The translations under genes were made by a program, and so were the position numbers. Source: Octopus bimaculoides (Eukaryota). Taken from it: a stretch of DNA of 63,922 bases. Shown piece by piece: positions 14,441 to 58,560 of the stretch; within the stretch, counting starts at the first letter, position 1; each line of letters begins with the position of its first letter. Under the pieces are notes generated by a model that was not told where the DNA came from, searched no databases, and saw nothing but the letters and a program-made list of their open reading frames with translations. The stretch covers positions 37,138,940-37,202,861 of the forward strand of contig NC_068994.1 of assembly GCF_001194135.2 (NCBI RefSeq), in the 5' to 3' direction.

Positions 14441-15372
14441 GATAAAATAAAGTACCAGTTAAGTACCAGTGTCAATGTAATTGAAAGGCTCTCTCTCTCT
14501 CTCCTCAGAATTGCTGGCATTGAATGCCGCAGTGAACTGGTATTCCATTCTGGAGAAATGTGATATTGGTCACTCTTATGTCATGAAAACTGTGTAACTA
14601 GTTTTATGTGTTCTGTGGCTCAAGAAAAATGAAGTAACAAATAAAATTTTCTATATGAAGACACTGTATGAATATTTTATGGTAGTCAGTAGCAACAAAA
14701 GCGTTAATGTATTCCAATACAACATAGCTACAGGCTGCCCTTTGGCAAAGCATAGTACCCATTTATCTGCCCTACCAGAGATACCATGTAGTCATGAGAG
14801 TGCAGCACGATGGATTATGAAGAGGTAGTGGAAGAGCTCAACTGAGCCAACAGTGCTTCTTATATTGCTGCTGAGCAGAGGAATCCAAAATCAATGGTCA
14901 GGATCATCAAGCTCTATCAAGCAAGTAACTGCAATACATCCATAGTGGCAGTGTCCATGGTTGTGTAATCAGCTAATGAAAGAGTCATTATGACCAAAGC
15001 TGCTAATTCAAATTCATAATAATGGAATTGGATTGTGACAGAAAGTCATGGGAATCTGCAGAAGCAGTGAGAAAAGTAGAAAATTGACAGTACCCTTTGA
15101 GTTCCTGAGAGTCTTTTGGGTCTTTAGAATGTTAGATAGATTACCTCATAATATATGTTCTGACACTCAACACTCAGAGTTCAAATCCCTCCGAAGTCAA
15201 CTTTTCCATCTTTTGAAGTCAATAAAAAGTTAGTCTAAGGCAGTGAACTGGAAGATTAGTAAAAGTTTCTGAAATATGCTTTGCAGTTATTTGCTCTGAG
15301 TTCAAATCCTGCCATAGTTGTAGACAATTTGGGGGGGTCTAGTTCCACCTTCTGGCTCTTTGGATTCCTTAA

Positions 15373-17148: not shown

Positions 17149-17550
17149 TCTTACTCTTACTTGTTTCAGTCATTTGACTGCGGCCATGCTGGAGCACCGC
17201 CTTTAGTCGAACAAATCGACCCCAGGACTTATTCTTTGGAAGCCTAGTACTTATTCTATCGGTCTCTTTTGCCGAACCGCTAAGTTACAGGGACGTAAAC
17301 ACACCAGCATCGGTTGTCAAGCAATGTTGGGGGGACAAACACAGACACACAAACATATACACACACATATATATACATACATATATACGACGGGATTCCC
17401 TCAGCTTCTGCCCACCAAATCCACTCACAAGGCCTTGGTCGGCCCGAGGCTATAGTAGAAGACACTTGCCCAAGGTGCCACGCAGTGGGACTGAACCCAG
17501 AACCATGTGGTTGGTAAGCAAGCTACTTACCACACAGCCACTCCCGCGCC
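17147..17550 (-). mobile_element. SINE family A, well-preserved CpG-rich copy
   Basis: Complete head, central microsatellite and tail; many CpGs retained. Confidence 0.95.
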
Positions 17551-20683: not shown

Positions 20684-20764
20684 TAAATAGTAATGAAGAT
20701 ATACATAGACTCAATTTGAATTCTACCTTTTTCCTGTTTGTATCACCATATCATCATCGTTATC

Positions 20765-20945
20765 ATTATCGTCATTGTTTAACATCTGCCTTCCATGCTA
20801 GGCATGGGTGAAATGGATTCACAAGATTCGGCCAGGCAGAAGCCTGCACCAAACTTCAGTGACTGTTTGGTAGGATTTTTACAGCTGGATGCTCTTTCTA
20901 ACACCAGCCGCTCAGCAGAATGGATTTAGTGCTTTTTACATGGCA
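20765..20945 (-). mobile_element. SINE family C, 5'-truncated
   Basis: TTTAACATCTGCCTTCCATGCTAG...CTACAGCTGGATGC. Confidence 0.8.
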
Positions 20946-20979
20946 CAAGCACAGAATATATATATATATATATATATAT

Positions 20980-21160
20980 ATGTAAAAGCACCCACTACAC
21001 TCTCTGAGTGGTTGGCGTTAGGAAGGGCATCCAGCTGTAGAAACTCTGCCAAATTAGATTGGAGCCTGGTGTTGCCATCCGGTTTCACCAGTCCTCAGTC
21101 AAATCGTCCAACCCATGCTAGCATGGAAGGCGGACATTAAATGATGATGACGATGATGAT
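20980..21160 (+). mobile_element. SINE family C, 5'-truncated
   Basis: GGTTGGCGTTAGGAAGGGCATCCAGCTGTAG...GCATGGAAGGCGGACATTAAA followed by a (TGA)n tail. Confidence 0.9.
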
Positions 21161-21204
<44 letters not shown>

Positions 21205-28756: not shown

Positions 28757-29132
28757 NNNNNNNNNNNNNNNNNNNNNNNNNNNNNNNNNNNNNNNNNNNN
28801 NNNNNNNNNNNNNNNNNNNNNNNNNNNNNNNNNNNNNNNNNNNNNNNNNNNNNNNNNNNNNNNNNNNNNNNNNNNNNNNNNNNNNNNNNNNNNNNNNNNN
28901 NNNNNNNNNNNNNNNNNNNNNNNNNNNNNNNNNNNNNNNNNNNNNNNNNNNNAACAGGTCGCGGTCTCAAAGCGACGAAAATATTTTGACAAATTAAATT
29001 TAAATGTTGAAGTGAATCTAACGGATTTTGTGTGTTATTTTAAATGGCTTATAAACACCTTCCACGCTGCAATTGTTTTCGTTCCAGCACACGATCTCAG
29101 ATCAGGTCACTTGCTATGCAAGTGCATCTCCG

Positions 29133-29172
<40 letters not shown>

Positions 29173-30538: not shown

Positions 30539-30917
30539 GGCACAGGCATGGCTGTGAGGTAAGAAGTTGGCATCACAGTCACATAGTTCTGGGTTCAGTC
30601 CCACTACATGGCACTTTGAGTAAGTGTCTTTCACAATAGCCTTGGGCCAACCAAAGCCTTATGAGTGGATTTGGAAATGGAAACTGAAAGAAGCTCATTG
30701 TTTGTATATGTATATATCTATGTGCATGTGTCTTTGTGTCTGTGTTTGCTCCCCACCATTGCTTGATAACTGGTGTTGGTCTGGTGTTCAACAAAAGATA
30801 CTGACAGAATAAGCACCAGCCTATAAAAAATAAACCATGGGGTCAATTTCTTCGACTAAAAGGCACTTTCAGATGGTGCTCCAGCAAGGCTGCAGTCAAA
30901 TGACTGAAACAAGTAAA

Positions 30918-30920
<3 letters not shown>
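30539..30920 (+). mobile_element. SINE family A
   Basis: Head and tail motifs; followed by (TA)n. Confidence 0.9.
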
Positions 30921-30965
<45 letters not shown>

Positions 30966-30970
<5 letters not shown>

Positions 30971-32016
30971 AAAAAGAAATGGAGCAACAATTAACAATTA
31001 GAAGTTGATCATTGGTATTAAAAGGTCATAGTTTGATTGTAGTTCAAGAACATTTACAGCTCTTCCAGTTTGTTATTTCAAAGTAAATTTGCATTTATCT
31101 CGTTCCATTTAACAAACATCATCAGAATGATTTAGAGTTTATCAGAGGAATATAGATAGGAGAAAAAGGAAAATGAAAAGCAAAAGGAAAAATGGAAAAA
31201 AGGGAAAAGTTTGTTAAGTCTTTAGGCTTACATTTTTGTGCCCTTTTAGGTTCCTCGTGTGTGTATGTTTTTACAATTAGATGAACGGAGCAATATGTGG
31301 GGAAAATGCCGAGTTGACCGGTGTGATAGTCAAAGGAGTTATACCTGGTAGTAATATCTGGTGTTAATTGTAATAAATGACACTGTTTGTGACTGCTAGA
31401 TGAGTCCCTATGATTATAAATAATGCCCTTGTTAAAAACTGAGGATACTTTTAAAAAGTTAATGCGATATAATGTATAAATTATATTTTTATCATTTCTT
31501 TTATGTAACCCAAATTTATACATTATATTGCACTAACTTTTTAAAAGCATCCTTAGTTTTGAACAAGGGCATTATTTGTAATCATAAGGATTTATGTAGT
31601 GATCACAAACAGTGTCATTTATTACAATTAACAACACCGGATATTGCTACTGGGTATAACTCCTTTGACTATCATGCCGGTCAACTAATCTTTCTCTCCA
31701 CTTATTGCTCCATTCATCTAATTGAAGAAACATACACACACGAGGAACCTAAAAGGGCACAAAAATGTAAGCCTAAAGATTTAACGAACTTTTTTCCTTT
31801 TTTCCTTTTGTCCTTTTTTCCCTATCTATATTCCTCTGATAAACTCTATATCATTCTGATGATGTTTGTTAAATGGAACAAGATAAATGCAAATTTATTT
31901 TGAAATAACAAACTGAAACAGCTGTAAATGTTCTTGAATTACAATTAAACTATGACCATTTAATACCAATTATCAACTTCTAATTGTTAATTGTTGCTCC
32001 ATTTCTTTTTTTTTAT
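30966..32016. repeat. Long palindrome: about 510-bp inverted arms, 29-nt spacer
   Basis: 30966-31483 is the reverse complement of 31513-32016. ORF-track peptides 31122-31523(-) and 31472-31903(+) are homologous. Confidence 0.95.
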
Positions 32017-32209
32017 CTGAATATATTAAGCCATGGTTTTACCATTTGAATTACAAACTACAGTTAACTTTATAGCAAGGCATATACATAGTGAGGTCAT
32101 ACACCAGTAGTACCTACGGATACAATTATCCCTTAGACGGTTGCATAACCTCTGACTCATAACTTTTCTATACCAATTTTATACACACACACACACATAT
32201 ATATATATA

Positions 32210-32362
32210 GGTGCAGGAGTGGCTGAGTGGTAAGTAGTTTACTTACCAACCACATGGTTCTGGGTTCAGTCCAACTGCATGGCACCTTGGGCAAGTGTCT
32301 CCTACTATAGCTTCGCCTTGTGAGTGGATTTGGTAGATAGAAACTGAAAGAAGCTCATCATG

Positions 32363-32399
<37 letters not shown>

Positions 32400-32612
32400 A
32401 TGTTTGTGTATCTGTATTTGACCCCACTGAACATTGCTTGACCACCAATGCTGGTGTATTTACATCCCCGTAACTTAGCAGTTCAGCAAAAGTGACCGAT
32501 ACAATAAGTACTACACCTACAAAGAATAAGTCCTGGGGTCAATTTGCTTGACTAAAGGCGATGCACCAGCATGGCCGCAGTCAAATGATTGAAACAAGTA
32601 ATAGAATAAAAA
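32210..32612 (+). mobile_element. SINE family A
   Basis: Head, central TA/TG tract, tail. Confidence 0.9.
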
Positions 32613-33310: not shown

Positions 33311-33639
33311 AAGCTATTCAATTCTATTCTAACAATTGTATTGCAATGTATTCTGCAATATTTAAAGCATAGAAAAATAAACCATCATTATTTTTTTTTC
33401 CCTAACAATGAAGAGCTAGACTGTCACAGGGAAATTATAGGATGTCTGTAAACTGTGCCTAATCAGTATAAATTAGCAATATTAGAATAATATTTTATAA
33501 TGTCATAACAAATCAATGAATGATTGTGGAAATATTAGAAAATAATTTGGTCGTTTCTTATGAAAGTAAATATTCTTGTAAAATGATATGTTTTGTGAGA
33601 AGAAGTGAGTTGAACAATTCCCAAGATGCTTCAACCCTT

Positions 33640-34700
33640 CTTTATGGTGTTGCTGCTGATGATGATGTTGATGGTGTTTCTAGTGGTGGCGTTGGTTGCA
33701 GTGGTGCTGGTTGTGGTGGTATTGGTTGTAATAGTAGCGGTCACGGTGGTGATGGTGGTTGTGGTGGTGACTGTGCTTGTGGAGGTGGTGACATAGAAAG
33801 CAGTATTAGTGATGACGATGGTAGTAGTAGTGATAGCGATGGTGGTGGTGCAGATTGCGATAGTAGTAATGGTAGTGGTGGAGATTGCAATAATGCTGGT
33901 GATAGTGGTAGTGATGGTCATGGTGATAATAGTAGTAGTGGTAGTGGTAGTAGTAGTAGTAGTAGTAGTAGTAGTTGTAGTAGTGGTGGTGGTGGTGGTG
34001 ATGGTGGCTTTGGTCATAGCAGTGGTCCTGATGGAGATATCCTATGAGTAAGGATGAGGTATCAGGATGGTATCAGGACAATAATGGTGTTTAGGAGATA
34101 GAGATGGTGTTGAGATGGCTGATATGGAGAGGAAGGGAGGGTAGATATTAGTTAGGGCGGTGGTGGTGGTGGTGGGGAGAAGAGGAATGGTATAAATACT
34201 ATCATAGTGGTGAGGAAGAGAGATGGTATTAGGACAATGAGATAAGGGCAGGGGGCAGAGAATGGTAATGGCATGGTGGTGGTGGAAAAGGAGAAAAGAA
34301 ATAGTATTGAGATGGTGATGTGTTATTTAAGAGGGAGGAGATGGTATTGTGACAATATGTGCTGGTGGTAAAAGGCATGAAGAATGGTTCTTGGTGAGGA
34401 GGAGAGAGAAATGGTATTGATATGATGGCAATGTTGATGGGGAGAGGATAACCATGTTGACAAGAAAGAGATGCTGGTAGTGGTGGTGGTGGTGGTGGTG
34501 ATGGTGAAAGGAGCTGGTATTGGGAGGATGGTTGTGGTGAACTTTATCATTGTCAATACTAGTGGTCGAGACTGCAATGCTGTTTAAAGATAGAAGATTG
34601 TTTTACAGATGGTGATGGTGGATGTTGTGGTGATGATGGATGCCGTTGTTGTAGTGGTAATGGTGGTGGTAGTGGCCGTCGTCATCGTCATATCAAATAT
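33640..34700. repeat. Degenerate (GGT/GAT/AGT)n low-complexity tract
   Basis: Trinucleotide periodicity with strong G/T strand skew. Confidence 0.85.
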
Positions 34701-35478
34701 TGGTGTTTATTGTGATGCAGAAAATGATGTTTTTATAGGAGATGTGATTTTTAAGAGAAGTGCTCATTGCAAACTGACCTTTATGTCAACACGGGGAGGA
34801 AAAAAATGTTGTTTTTGCCCAACCCCCTTTTTTTAGATTAAAACCTGGTCATATGAAAAGGACACAAAAATATATTTGTCCCTAGAAGAAAACAGAGGGA
34901 CAAAGACAGCAAAAAATATTTTTTTATAAAAAAAAAGTGGCAGATGCAAGGAAAGTGCACCTTAAAAACTTAAAAGCATCACCATGTTGTTGCTGGTGCT
35001 GTGGTTTGATCTGTCAGAGAAGGTGATTCAATATTAGTACAGCTGTGAGAAATTAAACAGGGCAAAGATGCTTTCTTTGAGCGGCAGTGAAGTGTCATGC
35101 AAGTAAAAAAATTGGCAAATGGCTGAAAATGGCATTACCGGAGCTGAAATGGATTCGCTAATATAGGGTCTTGGATAATCCAAATGGATTTTTTATGGGA
35201 TTCAATCAATAATGTTGAAACCAGTTGTCAGTGCAATACTGCAGATGTGAAAAAAATAAACACTGATAAGATTTGGTAACAATTTATATCAGTTTATATT
35301 TGTTTATATTTATAGCGGTTTATAAAGCAAGCAAGATATCAGCCATTGCTTAATGGAATGGCTGCTTTTGGTCTCTTATGGCTGGAGTTTACTTTTAGTT
35401 TAAGCTATATGTTTTGCTAACTTTTCTAGATTTATTCATTCATTTATTTATTTATTTATTTGTTTGTTTGTTTGTTTG

Positions 35479-36004
35479 TTAAGTTTTGCAGAAGAGAATA
35501 TCACAAAGAAAGGGGACAGGCTGATAGCAATTAGCCACTAAGTGTTAGCAATAACAGCAACAACAACAACAACAACAACAATAACAACAATGATAGCGAT
35601 GACGATGACAATCAAATATTTCGTAACCTTCACTTTATACCTTTGGTCATCAACACAAGCAAAACTGGAAAAATACCAGAGTGATATCTGTGATGGCTTT
35701 GTGACAATAAAACCTTGAAGGGTCACGTATGTGAGAGACTGTTTGATTTTTAGTTTATAATGTAATAACAGCTCAGCTTGCAAGAAAGACCCCAGCACTG
35801 CACATGGTAGGATGGATATTGGCAAAGGGAGAGAAACAAAGTAATAGAACTTAATAGAGGAAATGTATTGGAAAAAGAAAAAAAAAAAAAAAAAAAAANN
35901 NNNNNNNNAAAAAAAAAAAAAAAAAAAAAAAAAAAGGGAAAATACAATATGTGACGATAGAGATAACTGAGTGTATGATGAGTTTGTGATTTAGAAACAG
36001 AAAA
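35479..36004 (-). repeat. Inverted duplication, arm 1 (partner 38641-39087)
   Basis: Near-identical ORF-track peptides MPISILPCAVLGSFLQAELL... on opposite strands; this arm has expanded poly-A and (CAA)n. Confidence 0.9.
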
Positions 36005-36496
36005 TAATAATAGCCTGGCTGTTTGATATGTTTATGATACATAGAAATAGGGGAAGAAAAATATACAAGATATGAAGTAGATTTTTAATGCACAAGTACA
36101 GAGTAAAAAATATTACAGGACTGTTTTTCTTTTTTTCCTGCCTTTTTGGTAGAATAAGAATATAGATTTACTTTAGCTTTGAGGTAGGGTTGAAATAAAT
36201 CAGAACAGTTTGCCTCTCTAATGGAGCTATAGTATAAACATTAACCATAGAATGAATTTAGCTATAAGAAAAGTTTGTTGTATAAAAAAATTCCTTGGTT
36301 TAACTACATCATTGGTTTTGCAGCCAAAAGTGATTAGAAAAAATAATTCCAATGTATAGTTAGATTTCTTTCATAATGAGGCACATAATTTCATAGATAT
36401 CAAATATGAGTGAAACTTAATTAGTATTAATATCTTTGGAATATTTTGAAAATATTTGTTGATAATGTTGAAAACAAAAGTTTGGTGAAAAAAAGG

Positions 36497-37305
36497 AATG
36501 GCTGTGTGGCAAGAAGCTTATTTCCTAACCACATGGTTTTGGGTTCAGTCCCACTGCATGGCACTTTGGGCAAGTGTCTTCCACTTCAGGCCAACAAATC
36601 CTTGTAAGAGGATTTGGTTGACAGAAACTGAAAGAAGCCTGTTGNNNNNNNNNNATATATATATATATATGAAATATAAAATGGGACAAGAACGCAAAAC
36701 ATCCAGACAATTAGGTGATACAAAAGAGAGACAACAAAACATCCAGATAAACGATACAAAGAAAACAAGGACGGTTCATTCAGAGTTTTCTTTCCTCAGT
36801 CGAGTTCCAGATTATCTTTGCAATTTCGGCTGGTTATACTCGAGATTGCTCCAATCTGGCCAGCCGAAACGAAAAACTAAGCTAAGAGCATTAGATTCCT
36901 TGGAAGAAAGCAGCGAATGTATATGAAAACAAGGGCGGGAAGAAAATGGAGAATATTACTCAAATACAAATAACAGGACATAACAATAAGTGTCTTTCAA
37001 CTAAGGATGAATTAAATTAAGCTGGTATGTGTGAAAATAAAGCTTTATGGCAGGGACACAAGATTTCACAGGCACAGAGAGGAATATAGATGTTGCACAG
37101 ATATATGTGTATGTGTGTGTGTATGTATAGATTTATGTATGTTTGTCTTTGTGTCTATGTTTGTTGGTGTGTTTATGTCCCAGTAACATAGCGGTTCAGT
37201 ATAAGAGATCAATAGAATGAGTACCAAACATAAAAAAAAGGTCCTGGGTCTATTTGTTCGACTAAAACCCTTCATGGTGGTGCCCCTGCATGGCTGCAGT
37301 AAGTA
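36497..37305 (+). mobile_element. SINE family A split by an insertion
   Basis: Head at 36497-36644 and tail at about 37085-37305. Confidence 0.8.
36655..37080. mobile_element. Unclassified CpG-retaining insert inside the SINE central tract
   Basis: About 420 bp between collinear SINE halves; AAAACATCCAGA occurs twice. Confidence 0.5.
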
Positions 37306-37903
37306 AAATAAATGGTAAAAATACCATAGTTTAAATTCAGAATCATGTATTTCTGAAAAAATCTAAAGAAGACCAAACTTGATTTTAAGGATCTATTTTT
37401 GATGCCCACGAATCCAGAAATATCTGGGAATATTTAGTGAATTCATTAATGTATCATATTGATAATCATAAATAATGGCTTTGTGGTTTCAGATTAAATT
37501 TGATATGATGTAATATGAAATTTTAACTCCTCTATGATTCACTGCAATTAACCTTACTGTTTTCTTATTATCCAATGTATTTTTTAAAGTTCCATAAATT
37601 AGAATTGGTAATTAATCTCTTTTTCTAGTTATCTTCGCAAAAGTTTTCCTAGATTTTAAATTTAATTTAAAATTCAAAACAAAAATTTACCATTAGCATA
37701 TGGGTAGATCGTTTTCTTGATGTTAATCCATCCACCAAAAGCCTTTAGATGCATTTGAGTTAATTCTACACCTTTCACTTGCTCTACACTCTACCATCAC
37801 TCATAATCTCTCCATTTGATGTGCTTACCTAGTATAGAATTGTCAATCATTTCTTTGTGACTCTTCTAACTTTGATTTTAAGAGAATTTACTTATCATTA
37901 AAT

Positions 37904-38330
37904 GCAGGTTTGGCTGTGAGGTTAAGAAGCCTGTTTTGCAGCCATGTGGTTTTGGGTTCAGTCCCACTACATGGCACCTTGAACAAATGCCTTTTATTAT
38001 AGCCCTGAGCTGACTGATACCTTGTAAGTGAATTTAGTAGACAGAAACTCTGAGAAATCCAGCTGTCTATATATACATACATACATACATACATTCAAAC
38101 ACACACACACATACATATATGTATATATGCGTGTACGTGTGTGTGTGCATCTTCACCACAAGACAACTAGTGTTGGGTTGTTTATGTTGCTGTAACTTAG
38201 CAGTTCAACAAAAGAAAATGATAGAATAAGTACCAGACTTTAAAAAAAGAAGAACTGGAGGTGTTAACTCTTCAAAGCAGTGCCTCAGTATGGCTGTGGT
38301 CCAATGAGTGAAACAAGTAAAAGATGAAAA
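37904..38330 (+). mobile_element. SINE family A, older copy
   Basis: Degraded head and tail motifs. Confidence 0.85.
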
Positions 38331-38640
38331 AATTATAACCAGAGACAGAAAGTTTTAATTTATTCAATCCATTAGATCAAACACCAATTACCATTTCTTG
38401 AGCCTGCAGACTGAAGAACTGCTCATGACTTTCACAAGTTTTCTTGGACTGGCAGATTGATACTGCTAGTGTTTCTCGTGAATGGTTGCATAAAATAAAA
38501 GTGTAGGTAAGAAATTTCAGAAAAACAATGTTCTGAAGTGGAAAGACCAAAGATAGTTGTTGATTGAACCTGGATATTGTGGAGTAAAGAGATGAGTTAT
38601 TTAGAGTTAACTGAATGGTGATATCACAGAACAAGCTAGG

Positions 38641-39087
38641 TTTTCTGTTTCTAAATCACAAACTCTTCATACACTCAGTTTATTTCTATAATCACACATT
38701 GTATTTTTACTTTGCCTTTTTTTCCAACACATTTTCTCTATTAAATTCTATTACTTTGTTTCTCTCCCTTTGCCAATATCCATCCTACCGTGTGCAGTGC
38801 TGGGGTCTTTCTTGCAAGCTGAGCTGTTATTACACTATAAACTAAAAATCAAACAGTCTCTCACATACATGACCCTTCAAGATTTTATTATCACAAAGCC
38901 ATCACAGATATCACTCTGGTATTTTTCCAGTTTTGCTTCTGTTGATGTCCAAAGATTTAAAGTGAAGGCTACAAAATATTTGATTGTCATCATAATTGCC
39001 ATCAATGTTGTTGCTAACTCAGTAACAGAAACCAATTGCTATCAGCTTGTTCCCTTTCTTTATGATATTCTGCTCTGCAAAAATTTA
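38641..39087 (+). repeat. Inverted duplication, arm 2 (partner 35479-36004)
   Basis: Collinear reverse complement of arm 1. Confidence 0.9.
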
Positions 39088-40324
39088 AAAAGAGAAAAAT
39101 GAGAAAGAAAACTCTAGAATAGAGGCCAATACAGTAGTGGTAGAAAAAGTAGAATGACGAGGCAGAGGCTAGAGTGTAATAGCGAATGCCTTCTTACTAA
39201 TCTCTTTAGTTATGGTCTAAGAAGTTGGAGCAGGGGTTCACTGTAATTGTGACTCTCATCTGAAATCTGTAAACAGTTTGTTTTGTTCTTTGTTGGTGAC
39301 AGATGAAATTTTCCCAGCCCTAAACCGGAAAGCCAGTGTTTGTAATGTAGTTTTGATTGCATTGAAAGCATGTGTTTACTAAGAGTTAACCTCTGTGGTA
39401 GTGAGATTTATTATTTTTTATAGCAGTCTTGTGGGTTCTAATTGTTTACTGTTCAATTTATACTTAAGGTGAGAGTGGTGACAATGTTTACTTGATGGTA
39501 ACTCATTATCAATTATGCAAACAAGATAACATTATTTATGGTAAACGAATTGCATATTTAATACAGATTTTATTTCTCAAGATTTCAGAATTAGTTTAAT
39601 AGAATGAATTGGAATTTAATGATGGTTTTTGGTTATGTATATTAATGTAACCTTGAGGAATTACCATAAGCATTGTTACAGTTAGCAGAGAAATTTAATT
39701 AAAAATGCAGACATTAAATTAGTTAACACTGATCATTCAAATAAAGGTGATATGTTGTGAGGAAAATTTGCTTGATTGCTAGCTTGCAGTTTTAAACAAA
39801 AAGGATTAACAGCCTCAATAAAAACATCATGAATGGAAACTAATAATTCCCCCTTAAAAGCATTTTAGAATAAAACAAAAATTTTGAATACACATTAGAA
39901 TAATTAAAAGTAACATCTTATGTAATGATTTAGGAAACATGTCAATTCCATCACAAAAATCACTAGCGTATTAATTGCTATGAAGAAAAACAAATGTTTT
40001 CAACTTGTCATAATAACAGAACATTGTCTGATAACATAGAAGAAAATATAGGAAAAATGTAAAGTTTAGCAACAGCTGTAAATACATTTCAGAGCAGTTT
40101 TACAATAAAACTTGGTGAGATTAAGACACAGAAATTGATATTTTATTTGAATCTGTCCATGGAACAGAGGTAAAGTCATGGCTGCATAGCTAAGGTTATA
40201 GTTGAATAGATATTGTTTTATTTATCCTATTTAGTACATTCAAATATAAATAACTAGCTTTGGTTACTTTATTTGATGCTAATAATAATAATAATGATGA
40301 TAATGCTAATAATCATAATAGTAA

Positions 40325-49304: not shown

Positions 49305-49539
49305 TTTCTCTACATGCCTTTCCAAAAGTATTTCATAATAAAAGCAAACTTTCTTGGTTAGTTTCAATAATTAATTCTTCCAGCAAATTGTCACTCTCCA
49401 CTACCAGGTCATTGCATACATATCATTCTTCATGTTCTTCTCATTGAAGATGTAGGACCTAGTGGTTAGGATATTAAGCTTATGATCATAAGGTTGTGGG
49501 TTCAATTTCTGGACTAGGCAGTGCATTGAGTCCTTGAGC
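49305..49539 (+). repeat. Inverted duplication, arm 1 (partner 50123-50384)
   Basis: TTTCTCTACATGCCTTT...GTATTTCATAAT...CTCCACTACCAGGTCAT...GAAGATG...CCTTGAGC is found inverted downstream; the inner part is a SINE E head. Confidence 0.9.
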
Positions 49540-50122
49540 AAAGCACTTATTTTCACATAGTTTTAGTTTGCCTATCTTTAAGGAGGACCAGGCCAGTACT
49601 GGTATAACTCTTTCTTTTACTCCCTCTATTTTTCCCTCTCTCTCCTTCTCTCTCCAGCTGTCATACCCTAGATGTTCCACTGGGTCACAGTTGAGGGGTT
49701 AAAACAATTAGTGAAAACAGGGTACATGTTACCAAACCATACTTATTCACAGGAGCATTTCTGGGGAGTGGGGTTAAAACAGTGGTCCACCTTGGGGATG
49801 CTTTTATAGAAGCAACACTTTGGGGTTTGCTATATAAGCCTGTATAGGGTGGGTGGGGGACAAAATACTGCTATACATTTTGCCTGTTGCAAACATTTCT
49901 GCCAGCTTGCTTCCTTACATTTGTTGTATATTGGGAGGTCATTATGCCAATACACATACAATACACATGTGCTGATTCTATTTCACATCTTTATTTCTGT
50001 TAGTCAATTGGCTAGCCATTCAATCAATTAATTAATTGGACTGTTTGATTGATCATCTTGTCAATCAGTCAGTTGATTAAGACCATTAGCACACTTACCA
50101 TGTTCAATATAACCTTATAAAA

Positions 50123-50384
50123 GCTCAAGGACTCAATGAACTGTCCAGTCCAGAAACTGAACCCACAACCATATGATCATGAGTTTAACAACTCAACCAC
50201 TAGGTCTTGCATCTTCATGGGAAAGAACATGTAGATTGATAGAAATCTATGACCTGGTAGTGGAGTGTGACCATTTGCAGGAAGAATTAATTATTGAAAT
50301 TAATCAAGAAAGTTTGCTTCTATTATGAAATACTATTATATTATATGAAATACTGTTTGTATTATGAAAAGGCATGTAGAGAAA
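50123..50384 (-). repeat. Inverted duplication, arm 2 (partner 49305-49539)
   Basis: Reverse complement of arm 1 with a small internal tandem duplication near 50325-50370. Confidence 0.9.
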
Positions 50385-51480: not shown

Positions 51481-52749
51481 CACACACATACATATATATA
51501 TAAATAGATATATATATGTATGTATATGTATATGTCTTCCTTGGACTTTCCTCTGTCTCCTATTACTGAAGAAGAATTTTGCTCACAACATAAGACACCC
51601 TTTCTTTCCTTCCCTGAGCATCTTATTAATACTTTGCATGTACCACGTCCTCACATTGTTGTTTTATTCTATTTTTTGAGGGGTTGCAATTAATTTTATA
51701 TATATATGTATATGATTATTGCAAGTGAGGTTTTGTGAGGAGATAGATTCCTCTTTAAAGGGATGTCAACATCCAAGCGTCCTCTGGCTTTATCTTATAT
51801 ATCAATGAACTTTCTAGAATCCTGTTTATCCATGGTAGTATTAGTGTTTATTATTTATTAGGCACCAGTATTATACACATTTCAGAGTTTCAGTATTTCA
51901 TATAGATTTTCACTTCTTATCAATATATGTGGGTATAGTTATAGTAATATATCATAAAGGAAATGGAAAGTTTGAACACAGCATAATCCATTTATTTTAC
52001 ATTTTGTCAATTATATAAGCCTACAATCATTTCCATATCAATCTCCATTCAAATTACGATTAGAATTGCATTACGAAATAACAAAGGTAGATATTTCTTC
52101 AGGGTGAAAATTGACACATTTGTTTTTACATCCTAATAGACTGAGCGTACTTCAACAGACTAAAATAGTGGCATGCGTTTATTTATGTGTGTATGTTAGC
52201 ATGTATGAAACAAAGAAACCGTTATAGATATATATATACGTATTTTTCATTTATGTGTTTATAAGTAAGTACATCTGTTTATTTCATTTTAATTTATACT
52301 ATTAATTGTGAGAACTTGAATTGATAGTATAATTTTTATTAATTTATTAATTATTTTCTAGGTATGTTAGTTATAATTGTTGGTATCTAGGGTTAATTTT
52401 TATATTTTATTTAATAAATTTAACTACATCTATTTAACCAGGGTATTGTTTTCTATGTATCATGCACATGCATACATAAATAAATGCATACTGCTATTTT
52501 AGTCTGTTGATGAATGCTCAGTCTATTAGGATGTAAAAACAAATGTGTAAATTTTTGCCCTGCATAAATATCTACCTTCATTATTCCATAATGTAATTTT
52601 AATTGTAATTTGAATGAAAATGGATATGGAACTGATCGTAGGCTTATATAATTGACAAAATGTAAATAAATGGATTATGCTGTGTTCAAACTCTCCATTT
52701 TGTGTATGATACACACACACACACGTGTGTGTGTGTGTGTGTATGTGTG

Positions 52750-58107: not shown

Positions 58108-58560
58108 TCTCTATTTATTCTTTTATTCTTTTACTTGTTTCAGTCATTTGGCTGTGGCCATGCTTGAGCACCGCCTTAAAAGGTGTTAGTCGGAGAAATC
58201 AACCCTAGGATTTATTCTTTGTAAGCCTAGTAGTTATTCTATCAGTCAATTTTGCCAAATCGCTAAGTTATGGGGACATAAACACACCAGCATTGGTTGT
58301 CAAGTGATGGTGGGGGAGGGACAAACACAGACACACACACAAATATATACATACACACACATACACACACACTCACACACACACACACACACATATATAC
58401 AATGAGCTTCTTCCAGTTTCCATCTACTAAATCCACTCACAAGGCTTAGGTTGACATGAGGCTATAGTAGAAGACACTTGCCCAAGGTGCCACACAGTGG
58501 GACTGAATCCAGAATCATGAGGTTGGGAAGCAAGCTTCTTACCACACAGCCAAGCCTGCG
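58108..58560 (-). mobile_element. SINE family A
   Basis: Full reverse-complement copy. Confidence 0.9.

What the first reader, a model, noticed from the sequence alone, without database searches (positions are those of the whole stretch)
30966..32016. 1.05-kb near-perfect palindrome
Arms of about 510 bp, roughly 85% identical by eye, are separated by only 29 nt. They are unrelated to the SINEs and mariners here, with no transposase or clear TSD. Long closely spaced palindromes are normally unstable, and arm divergence shows this one is old and not an assembly echo. It is either a giant foldback element or a fold-back duplication. If transcribed, it gives about 500 bp of dsRNA, an ideal ADAR/Dicer substrate; extensive A-to-I editing in coleoids is established.
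Basis: partly seen in the sequence, partly recalled or inferred. Interest (0 to 1): 0.7.

Follow-up and report, generated by a model that had tools for sequence, protein, structure and literature searches.

The report
Old 1-kb inverted duplication in octopus DNA
A real but decayed 1-kb DNA palindrome in repeat-rich, non-coding octopus sequence, most likely made when replication or repair copied about 500 bases backwards next to their source; it is an ordinary structure for this genome and shows no sign of a function.

Summary
The palindrome is real. The arms are 30968-31482 and 31513-32013, 515 and 501 nt, with a 30-nt spacer. Identity is 88% counting gaps and 90% without. The differences are 36 transitions, 13 transversions and three slippage-type indels, so this is evolutionary decay, not an assembly echo.

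It is non-coding. It is unrelated to the SINEs and mariners in the window, and no second copy exists in the window or in about 100 kb of other octopus DNA.

One new detail favours a local origin. The 10-mer CATTTCTTTT flanks the right arm as a direct repeat (31493-31502 and 32000-32009), and it is the reverse complement of 30972-30981 at the outer end of the left arm. That layout fits a template switch or templated repair primed at a pre-existing inverted microhomology, with the left arm as source and the right arm as copy.

A foldback transposon is not excluded, because genome-wide copy number and the orthologous locus were out of reach.

Either strand would fold into a roughly 500-bp hairpin RNA, but nothing here shows transcription, editing or small RNAs. 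Long inverted repeats occur about every 15-20 kb in the octopus DNA sampled.

Interest is low to moderate.

The parts
30968..31482 (+). Left arm, 515 nt. Inferred to be the original (source) sequence.
   Evidence: for the arm. The polarity is inferred from the direct repeat that flanks the other arm.
30972..30981 (+). AAAAGAAATG at the outer end of the left arm. It is the reverse complement of the 10-mer that flanks the right arm, and is the inferred priming microhomology.
   Evidence: 5 occurrences in the window against 0.5 expected, three of them in this structure.
31162..31209 (+). Purine-rich (AAAAGG)n-like microsatellite inside the left arm; its mirror is at 31789-31821. It holds the 10-nt and 7-nt indels between the arms.
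   Evidence: (Tandem Repeats Finder) and the alignment.
31483..31512 (+). 30-nt non-palindromic spacer. 31483-31492 ATATTTTTAT is the inferred original flank of the left arm. 31493-31502 CATTTCTTTT is direct-repeat copy 1. 31503-31512 ATGTAACCCA is inferred filler at the return junction.
   Evidence: No other copy of the filler was found.
31513..32013 (+). Right arm, 501 nt. 31513-31999 is the inferred inverted copy of 30982-31482. 32000-32009 CATTTCTTTT is direct-repeat copy 2. 32010-32013 is a partial match.
   Evidence: 10-nt direct repeat, p = 0.004 against random pairs of 30-mers from the window.
31472..31903 (+). 143-aa ORF running outward from the centre. Its mirror is the 133-aa ORF at 31122-31523 on the minus strand. 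Judged non-coding.
   Evidence: No Pfam match, no homolog, dN/dS 0.58 from 9 synonymous and 22 non-synonymous changes.
30543..30968 (+). Context, not part of the palindrome: an older SINE copy (30543-30920) with a (TA)24 array (30920-30968) that abuts the left arm.
   Evidence: K2P to the SINE consensus is 0.126, against about 0.053 per palindrome arm.
32014..32605 (+). Context: 185 nt of unique right flank (32014-32198, starting TATCTGAATATATT), then (CA)n(TA)n and a second SINE (32213-32605).
   Evidence: K2P to the SINE consensus is 0.093.

Best explanation
This is a genuine, non-coding inverted duplication made in place by a single event, and it has since decayed neutrally.

Inferred starting sequence: SINE-(TA)n, then the left arm, then ATATTTTTAT-CATTTCTTTT-TTTTTATCTG...

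Inferred event: during replication or break repair, a 3' end ending in ...AAAAGAAATG (the complement of CATTTCTTTT) annealed to the inverted 10-nt match at the start of the left arm. It copied about 500 nt of that arm off the wrong strand, then returned with 10 nt of filler.

Inferred product: left arm, ATATTTTTAT, CATTTCTTTT, ATGTAACCCA, inverted copy, CATTTCTTTT, TTTTTATCTG... This is exactly the present layout.

Since then the arms have drifted about 5% each through point substitutions and microsatellite slippage. The divergence and the 30-nt asymmetric centre make cruciform extrusion unlikely, so the structure persists.

It has no demonstrated function. If it lies inside a transcript, that RNA would contain a roughly 500-bp imperfect hairpin, the kind of substrate ADAR hyper-edits.

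Shown: the structure, its decay pattern, the three copies of the 10-mer, and the absence of coding or transposon hallmarks. Inferred: the template-switch mechanism, which arm came first, and neutrality.
For: - The palindrome and its substitution-dominated decay are real. The 10- and 7-nt indels lie in a microsatellite.
- CATTTCTTTT occurs at 31493-31502 and 32000-32009, flanking the right arm as a direct repeat. Its reverse complement lies at 30972-30981, the left arm's outer end.
- That 10-mer occurs 5 times in the window against 0.5 expected.
- A 10-nt direct repeat in those two positions has p = 0.004 against random pairs of 30-mers from the window. None of five other inverted repeats tested shows one apart from a microsatellite match.
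- There is no second copy of the arm in the 64-kb window or in about 100 kb of other octopus DNA.
- Transposon hallmarks are absent: no transposase or any Pfam domain, no long-period subrepeats in the arms, no target-site duplication around the whole element, and no terminal motif shared with the other inverted repeats.
- Both flanking SINEs look about twice as diverged as each arm, so the event happened between elements that were already there.
- Template switching at short pre-existing inverted repeats is an established way of making reverse-complement copies (PMC5453318, PMC8794818, PMC10766183).
Against: - Copy number in the whole genome is unknown. About 164 kb is roughly 0.006% of an octopus-sized genome, so only a family of well over 10,000 copies would have shown up.
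- The 10-mer signature was noticed after the fact. It could instead be a subterminal motif of a transposon.
- The 10-nt filler has no identified template.
- About 500 nt is long for a template-switch copy; the well-documented evolutionary cases are tens of bases.
- The outer 206 nt of the arms are more alike (94%) than the rest (87.5%; p = 0.02), as conserved transposon termini would be. The outer part is also poorer in GC and CpG.
- Transition differences favour G.U pairing on the + strand by 25 to 11. Neutral decay of a local copy does not predict that.
- Multi-copy palindromic repeats do exist in octopus.
Confidence: 0.55

Rival explanations
1. It is a decayed copy of a non-autonomous foldback-type or palindromic DNA transposon, a MITE-like element whose two arms are its terminal inverted repeats. 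It would have inserted at a TA at the 3' edge of the older SINE's (TA)n array.
For: - The outer ends are sharp and symmetrical. TA lies on both sides if the element is read as AGAAAAAG...CTTTTTTTT.
- The outer 206 nt are better conserved between the arms than the inner part.
- Long inverted repeats and palindromic repeats are frequent in octopus DNA, and several are demonstrably multi-copy. One example is the O. sinensis palindrome in L003, which has a copy at window 28953-29165 and is flanked by (TA)n.
- The strand-specific G.U excess would fit arms that co-evolved in a master copy constrained to fold on one strand.
Against: - No second copy was found in about 164 kb; this is weak evidence.
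- There is no similarity to the mariners in the window and no terminal motif shared with the window's other inverted repeats; comparison with known superfamily termini was from memory only.
- The TA..TA flank is uninformative, because the left flank is (TA)24.
- The arms lack the tandem subrepeats of Drosophila FB arms.
- The third copy of the terminal 10-mer, inside the loop and placed as a direct repeat around one arm, would be a coincidence (p about 0.004-0.008).
Confidence: 0.3
2. Whatever its origin, the locus is a functional hairpin-RNA gene transcribed from the + strand, and its pairing is kept by selection. It could serve as an ADAR substrate or sponge, or as a source of endogenous small RNAs.
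For: - 25 of 36 transition differences leave a G.U wobble in the + strand hairpin and only 11 an A.C mismatch (p = 0.029).
- Against a neutral spectrum taken from SINE copies, the counts are 25/11/12 observed and 14.9/14.9/18.3 expected (p = 0.0065). The pattern persists without CpG sites, at 22/8/11.
- The + strand fold is 42 kcal/mol more stable than the - strand fold.
- SINE copies show no strand-biased mutation in the window, so transcription-coupled mutation bias does not explain it.
- Octopus hyper-edits long dsRNA on a massive scale (PMC5625713).
Against: - The test was post hoc, on small numbers.
- A neighbouring inverted repeat shows the opposite sign, and eight other pairs show nothing.
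- The arms have still diverged 10%, with three bulges.
- There is no Rfam match.
- No transcription or small-RNA data could be consulted.
Confidence: 0.07
3. Two independent insertions of the same roughly 500-bp repeat landed tail to tail, 30 nt apart.
For: Inverted pairs of multi-copy repeats occur elsewhere in the window, for example 20756-21163. A 10-nt direct repeat around the right arm could be its target-site duplication.
Against: - No other copy of this repeat was found anywhere in the sample.
- The left arm has no matching duplication.
- The supposed target-site duplication of the right copy would, by chance, be the exact reverse complement of the 10 nt in front of the left copy.
- Both copies would have to begin and end at the same bases.
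Confidence: 0.04
4. It is an assembly or library artefact, such as a chimeric fold-back read or a mis-join.
For: The window is a short-read scaffold with nine N gaps. At least one gap appears to sit inside another palindromic repeat.
Against: - Artefactual fold-backs give identical arms or arms that differ mainly by indels.
- Here there are 49 substitutions with a transition:transversion ratio of 2.8 and only three slippage-type indels.
- The longest exact match between the arms is 52 nt.
- The structure sits within 6.9 kb of gap-free sequence.
Confidence: 0.03

Closest known systems
Template-switch mutations and microhomology-primed inverted duplications (four-point template-switch model; ODIRA-type switching at short interrupted inverted repeats)
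   Same: A reverse-complement copy lies next to its source with a short spacer. The junction sits at a pre-existing short inverted repeat, here 10 nt; the yeast junctions use 2-14 nt (PMC10766183). The result is a new hairpin-forming locus (PMC5453318, PMC8794818, PMC10710096).
   Different: The copy is about 500 nt, far longer than the tens of bases typical of the evolutionary cases. It is a simple interstitial duplication, not an inverted triplication. The two microhomology sites are about 510 nt apart, more than the 40-80 bp preferred in yeast. The mechanism is inferred from the end product only.
Foldback (FB) transposons of Drosophila and palindromic MITEs, such as the roughly 200-bp palindromic Harbinger-derived repeat of Xenopus tropicalis
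   Same: Almost the whole unit consists of two long inverted arms around a short loop. It is non-coding, and it would fold into tight dsRNA without needing a neighbouring inverted copy (PMC5625713 for the frog repeat).
   Different: No second copy, no target-site duplication and no recognisable terminal motif were found. The arms lack the tandem subrepeats of FB arms. At 1.05 kb it is several times larger than typical palindromic MITEs.
Hairpin-RNA (hpRNA) loci that give endogenous siRNAs in Drosophila, and long inverted-repeat ADAR substrates in animals
   Same: The predicted transcript is a long, nearly perfect intramolecular duplex: about 500 bp, 90% paired, with a longest perfect run of 52 bp.
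   Different: Expression, processing, editing and targets are all untested here. Membership of this class is defined by those data, not by the DNA.

Membership tests
Local inverted duplication by template switch or templated repair | A reverse-complement copy lies adjacent to its source | tested here: met
   Arms 30968-31482 and 31513-32013 are 30 nt apart.
Local inverted duplication by template switch or templated repair | Microhomology or a short pre-existing inverted repeat at the switch junction | tested here: met
   AAAAGAAATG lies at 30972-30981. Its complement CATTTCTTTT lies at 31493-31502 and 32000-32009 and flanks the copy (p = 0.004). The finding is post hoc.
Local inverted duplication by template switch or templated repair | Single locus in the genome, and an ortholog or ancestor with only one arm | not testable with these tools
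   No searchable octopus genome was available. Only about 100 kb of other octopus DNA could be fetched, and it holds no copy.
Foldback or palindromic DNA transposon (FB-like, MITE-like) | Long terminal inverted repeats make up most of the element | tested here: met
Foldback or palindromic DNA transposon (FB-like, MITE-like) | Multiple dispersed copies with the same termini | tested here: inconclusive
   No copy was found in the window or in L001-L005. That sample would only detect very high copy numbers.
Foldback or palindromic DNA transposon (FB-like, MITE-like) | Target-site duplication flanking the whole element | tested here: inconclusive
   No direct repeat of 3 nt or more was found. TA..TA is possible, but the left flank is (TA)24.
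Foldback or palindromic DNA transposon (FB-like, MITE-like) | Arms built of tandem subrepeats (FB proper), or termini matching an autonomous partner such as a mariner | tested here: not met
   Tandem Repeats Finder reports only a short (AAAAGG)n tract. There is no similarity to the window's mariner copies.
ADAR hyper-editing substrate or hpRNA locus | Long, nearly perfect intramolecular dsRNA | tested here: met
   Predicted folds are -703.6 kcal/mol for the + strand and -661.6 for the - strand. These are predictions only.
ADAR hyper-editing substrate or hpRNA locus | Transcription, clustered A-to-G mismatches, or 21-23-nt small RNAs from the arms | not testable with these tools
   No RNA data were accessible. 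SINE substitution patterns give no sign of strand-biased, transcription-coupled mutation in the window, which neither proves nor excludes transcription.
Assembly artefact | Arms identical, or differing mainly by sequencing-type errors | tested here: not met
   49 substitutions with a transition:transversion ratio of 2.8, and 3 slippage indels.

The most novel reading that the evidence does not exclude
The palindrome is a strand-specifically expressed long-hairpin RNA locus in an octopus, born de novo by one template-switch event. Selection for pairing in the + strand transcript has since shaped it, giving an excess of G.U-compatible changes. It would be a dedicated ADAR substrate or sponge, or an endogenous small-RNA source, caught at a datable stage.
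Probability: 0.06. Interest if true: 0.6.

Novelty: new member of a known kind. Interest (0 to 1): 0.25.

Why it matters
If the local-origin reading holds, this locus is a clean, datable example of a single replication or repair error creating a roughly 500-bp hairpin-forming locus from ordinary non-coding DNA. The junction signature is still legible. Such events are one proposed source of the long dsRNA that ADAR hyper-edits and that is reported to be unusually abundant in octopus (PMC5625713).

It gives a concrete prediction for comparative genomics across Octopus species. It also gives a defined test locus for hyper-editing and small-RNA mapping.

On present evidence it is one of many such structures and has no demonstrated function.

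Tried and rejected
- **Coding potential.** Two mirror ORFs of 133 and 143 aa run outward from the centre. They have no Pfam match and no homolog in the 5.8-billion-protein collection. They are not on record as called genes. dN/dS is 0.58 from 31 changes. Rejected as chance ORFs duplicated by the palindrome.
- **Known RNA families.** Rfam at E <= 1 matches only microsatellites in the flanks. No tRNA genes were found.
- **Copies elsewhere.**
  - Two exact arm words of 25 and 29 nt were absent from the metagenome and prokaryote-genome collections. The 25-mer was also absent from the viral collection. This was expected, since none of these holds cephalopod genomes.
  - The protein collection contains few octopus transposon ORFs. 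A mariner ORF from the window found only 10 clusters, so its silence on the arm ORF says nothing about copy number.
  - The window's mariner ORFs are not on record as exact products.
  - Five octopus loci fetched through mariner relatives (L001-L005) hold no copy of the arm.
- **Orthologous locus.** I looked for a host exon in the window that could lead to the orthologous locus. I saw only transposon-derived ORFs, so I did not spend the last large protein search.
- **Shared terminal motif.** No motif is shared among the four inverted repeats in the window.
- **Transcription-coupled mutation bias.** Tested as an explanation for the G.U excess using SINE copies polarised on their consensus. No asymmetry was found.
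- **A larger duplication including the SINEs.** Rejected. The two flanking SINEs align at only 68% identity, and the right flank has no match upstream of the left SINE.
- **A template for the 10-nt filler.** None found.
- **Literature.** No paper in the library holds both 'octopus' and 'foldback'.

Full report
**1. The observation**

The repeat finder gives three collinear inverted blocks that together span 30968-31482 and 31513-32013. Gapped BLAST of one arm against the reverse complement of the other gives a single alignment of 454/518 identities, 651 bits, E = 0.

MAFFT gives 449 matches, 36 transitions, 13 transversions and 20 gap columns. That is 90.2% identity over aligned bases and a K2P distance of 0.107. 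The spacer 31483-31512 is 30 nt. The longest exact run shared by the arms is 52 nt.

The 10-nt and 7-nt indels lie in a purine-rich (AAAAGG)n-like tract, 31162-31209 and its mirror 31789-31821. They look like slippage.

The structure sits in 6.9 kb of gap-free sequence between the N runs at 28757-28952 and 35899-35908. A substitution-dominated difference pattern with a transition:transversion ratio of 2.8 is what evolution produces. A fold-back artefact would give identical arms or arms differing mainly by indels.

**2. Context**

The window is AT-rich (GC about 0.25-0.40) and repeat-rich. It holds at least 15 copies of a SINE with a tRNA-like head and several degenerate mariners. The SINE family is shared with Octopus sinensis loci, and the best protein match of a window mariner ORF is 'SETMAR-like [Octopus sinensis]'. 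The source is therefore an octopus or a close relative.

The left arm abuts a (TA)24 array that follows a SINE at 30543-30920. On the right there are 185 nt of unique sequence, then a second SINE at 32213-32605. These two SINEs align at only 68% identity, so they are not part of one larger duplication. Measured against the SINE consensus they are at K2P 0.126 and 0.093, against about 0.053 for each palindrome arm. The palindrome therefore probably arose between elements that were already in place.

**3. What it is not**

- The arms match nothing else in the window by BLASTN or by an nhmmer profile of both arms.
- Two mirror ORFs of 133 and 143 aa run outward from the centre. They have no Pfam domain and no homolog among 5.8 billion proteins, and their dN/dS is 0.58 from 9 synonymous and 22 non-synonymous changes. 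I treat them as a chance ORF that the palindrome duplicated.
- Rfam finds nothing in the arms.
- The arms have no long-period tandem subrepeats.
- Around the whole element there is no direct repeat of 3 nt or more. A TA..TA flank is possible but meaningless next to (TA)24.

**4. How unusual it is**

The same 64 kb holds three more long inverted repeats whose arms are unique in the window:
- 51950-52203 / 52461-52711
- 49305-49539 / 50123-50384
- 35467-36004 / 38641-39099

In about 100 kb of other octopus DNA, fetched through mariner relatives (L001-L005), long inverted repeats and short-spacer palindromes turn up roughly every 15-20 kb, and several are multi-copy. One O. sinensis palindromic repeat has a copy at window 28953-29165, and its other half falls into an assembly gap.

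Porath et al. 2017 (PMC5625713) already reported that octopus has an exceptionally high fraction of loci able to form long, nearly perfect dsRNA (4.4 x 10^-3 of random 50-mers), and over a million hyper-edited sites. Their measure applies no low-complexity filter, so self-complementary (TA)n arrays may contribute to it.

This palindrome is the largest short-spacer one in the roughly 164 kb I could inspect. The class itself is ordinary here.

**5. Origin**

The decisive data were out of reach: copy number in the whole genome, and the orthologous locus in other species. No tool holds a searchable octopus genome. The exact-word scans of the metagenome, prokaryote and viral collections were negative, as expected.

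One internal feature does discriminate. The 10-mer AAAAGAAATG occurs five times in the window against 0.5 expected, and three of those are in this structure:
- 30972-30981 on the + strand, at the left arm's outer end
- 32000-32009 on the - strand, at the right arm's outer end
- 31493-31502 on the - strand, inside the spacer

Read on the + strand, CATTTCTTTT therefore flanks the right arm as a 10-nt direct repeat. It is also the reverse complement of the bases just in front of the copied part of the left arm. A direct repeat of that length in those two 30-nt windows has p = 0.004 against random pairs from the window. It is not seen at five other inverted repeats, apart from one microsatellite match.

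The whole layout is what a single microhomology-primed template switch or templated repair event would leave:
- Before: left arm, ATATTTTTAT, CATTTCTTTT, TTTTTATCTG...
- After: left arm, ATATTTTTAT, CATTTCTTTT, ATGTAACCCA (filler), reverse complement of 30982-31482, CATTTCTTTT, TTTTTATCTG...

Template switching at short pre-existing inverted repeats is a documented source of reverse-complement copies and new hairpins (PMC5453318, PMC8794818, PMC10710096, PMC10766183). On this reading the left arm is the source and the right arm the copy.

The signature was found after the fact. The copy is long for this mechanism, and the filler has no identified template. I put this explanation at about 0.55.

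**6. The main rival**

The main rival is a foldback-type or palindromic non-autonomous transposon, at about 0.3.

In its favour:
- Such repeats are common in this genome.
- The outer ends are sharp.
- The outer 206 nt of the arms are better conserved than the rest (94% against 87.5%, p = 0.02). That part is also poorer in GC and CpG.
- There is a strand-specific excess of G.U-compatible differences (section 7).

Against it:
- The third copy of the terminal 10-mer in the loop would be a coincidence.
- No transposon hallmark was found.

The other rivals:
- Two independent insertions of one repeat would require the target duplication of one copy to be, by chance, the reverse complement of the bases in front of the other.
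- An assembly artefact is contradicted by the substitution spectrum.

**7. An unexplained detail**

Of the 36 transition differences, 25 leave a G.U wobble in the + strand hairpin and 11 an A.C mismatch (p = 0.029). Against a neutral spectrum taken from SINE copies, the observed counts are 25/11/12 and the expected counts 14.9/14.9/18.3 (p = 0.0065). Without CpG sites the counts are 22/8/11. This accounts for the + strand fold being 42 kcal/mol more stable than the - strand fold.

Base composition cannot produce this asymmetry. SINE copies polarised on their consensus show no strand-biased mutation in the window: A>G 0.076 against T>C 0.069, and C>T equal to G>A at 0.132.

However, a neighbouring inverted repeat shows the opposite sign (9:24), one in another locus shows 9:1, and eight show nothing. 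It may be chance, or a trace of selection or history at the RNA level. It is the basis of the low-probability novel reading.

**8. Function**

None is shown. Either strand would fold into a roughly 500-bp imperfect duplex. The central 230 nt also fold strongly as DNA (z = -19). With 10% arm divergence and a 30-nt asymmetric centre the DNA should be stable; that rests on established knowledge, not on a test here.

The claim about ADAR or Dicer substrates depends on transcription, which I could not assess.

**9. Verdict**

This is a real, old, non-coding inverted duplication. It was most likely made in place by a template switch seeded at a 10-nt inverted microhomology. It is a new instance of a known kind, in a genome where such structures are common. 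Interest is low to moderate, and the next steps are clearly defined.

Noticed in passing
window 51950-52711; 49305-50384; 35467-39099: Three further long inverted-repeat structures whose arms are unique in the window. Arms are about 254, 235 and 460-540 nt, at 86-88% identity, with spacers of 257, 583 and about 2,600 nt. The last contains three SINE fragments and has a (TTTA)n(TTTG)n array at its left end.
   Followed up: partly
window 28757-29165 and L003 6190-6640: Window 28953-29165 is 90% identical to the right half of a near-zero-spacer palindromic repeat of O. sinensis that is flanked by (TA)n on both sides. In the window the other half falls into the N gap 28757-28952, so the short-read assembly appears to have broken inside a palindrome.
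   Followed up: partly
window 30968-32013, 35467-39099; L005 18894-20594: In the three longest-armed inverted repeats examined, transition differences between the arms are strand-asymmetric: G.U against A.C counts of 25:11, 9:24 and 9:1. The sign differs between loci, and eight other pairs show no bias. SINE copies show no matching mutational strand bias.
   Followed up: partly
window 31122-31523 (-) and 31472-31903 (+): Two mirror-image ORFs of 133 and 143 aa each start at an ATG in the inner end of the opposite arm and run outward. They have no homologs or domains and are among the longest ORFs outside low-complexity sequence in the window.
   Followed up: yes
window, SINE copies such as 30543-30920, 32213-32605, 17154-17546, 58127-58559: The SINE has a tRNA-like head, an internal (TG/TA)n tract, and a tail of (A/G)TAAAAGA-like units that is often followed by a (TA)n array rather than poly-A. 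(TA)n runs of at least 6 units occur 54 times and make up 2.4% of the window.
   Followed up: partly
L001 12241-12600 / 14448-14807 (ENA ERZ22157276 ctg12001l): 360-nt inverted repeats, 99.7% identical, flank a 647-aa reverse-transcriptase ORF. This is a young retroelement with inverted terminal repeats. A more decayed relative lies at L005 4573-6985.
   Followed up: no
window 9.97-10.6 kb, 21.4-22.3 kb, 24.15-25.0 kb, 62.15-62.9 kb; 42.1-42.7 and 44.2-44.6 kb: Degenerate mariner transposase remnants, and ORFs that look by eye like LINE endonuclease and tail fragments. I saw no convincing host exon anywhere in the window.
   Followed up: partly
window 33520-34050: A G-rich triplet low-complexity tract that gives long ORFs on both strands and a local GC skew of 0.43.
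   Followed up: no
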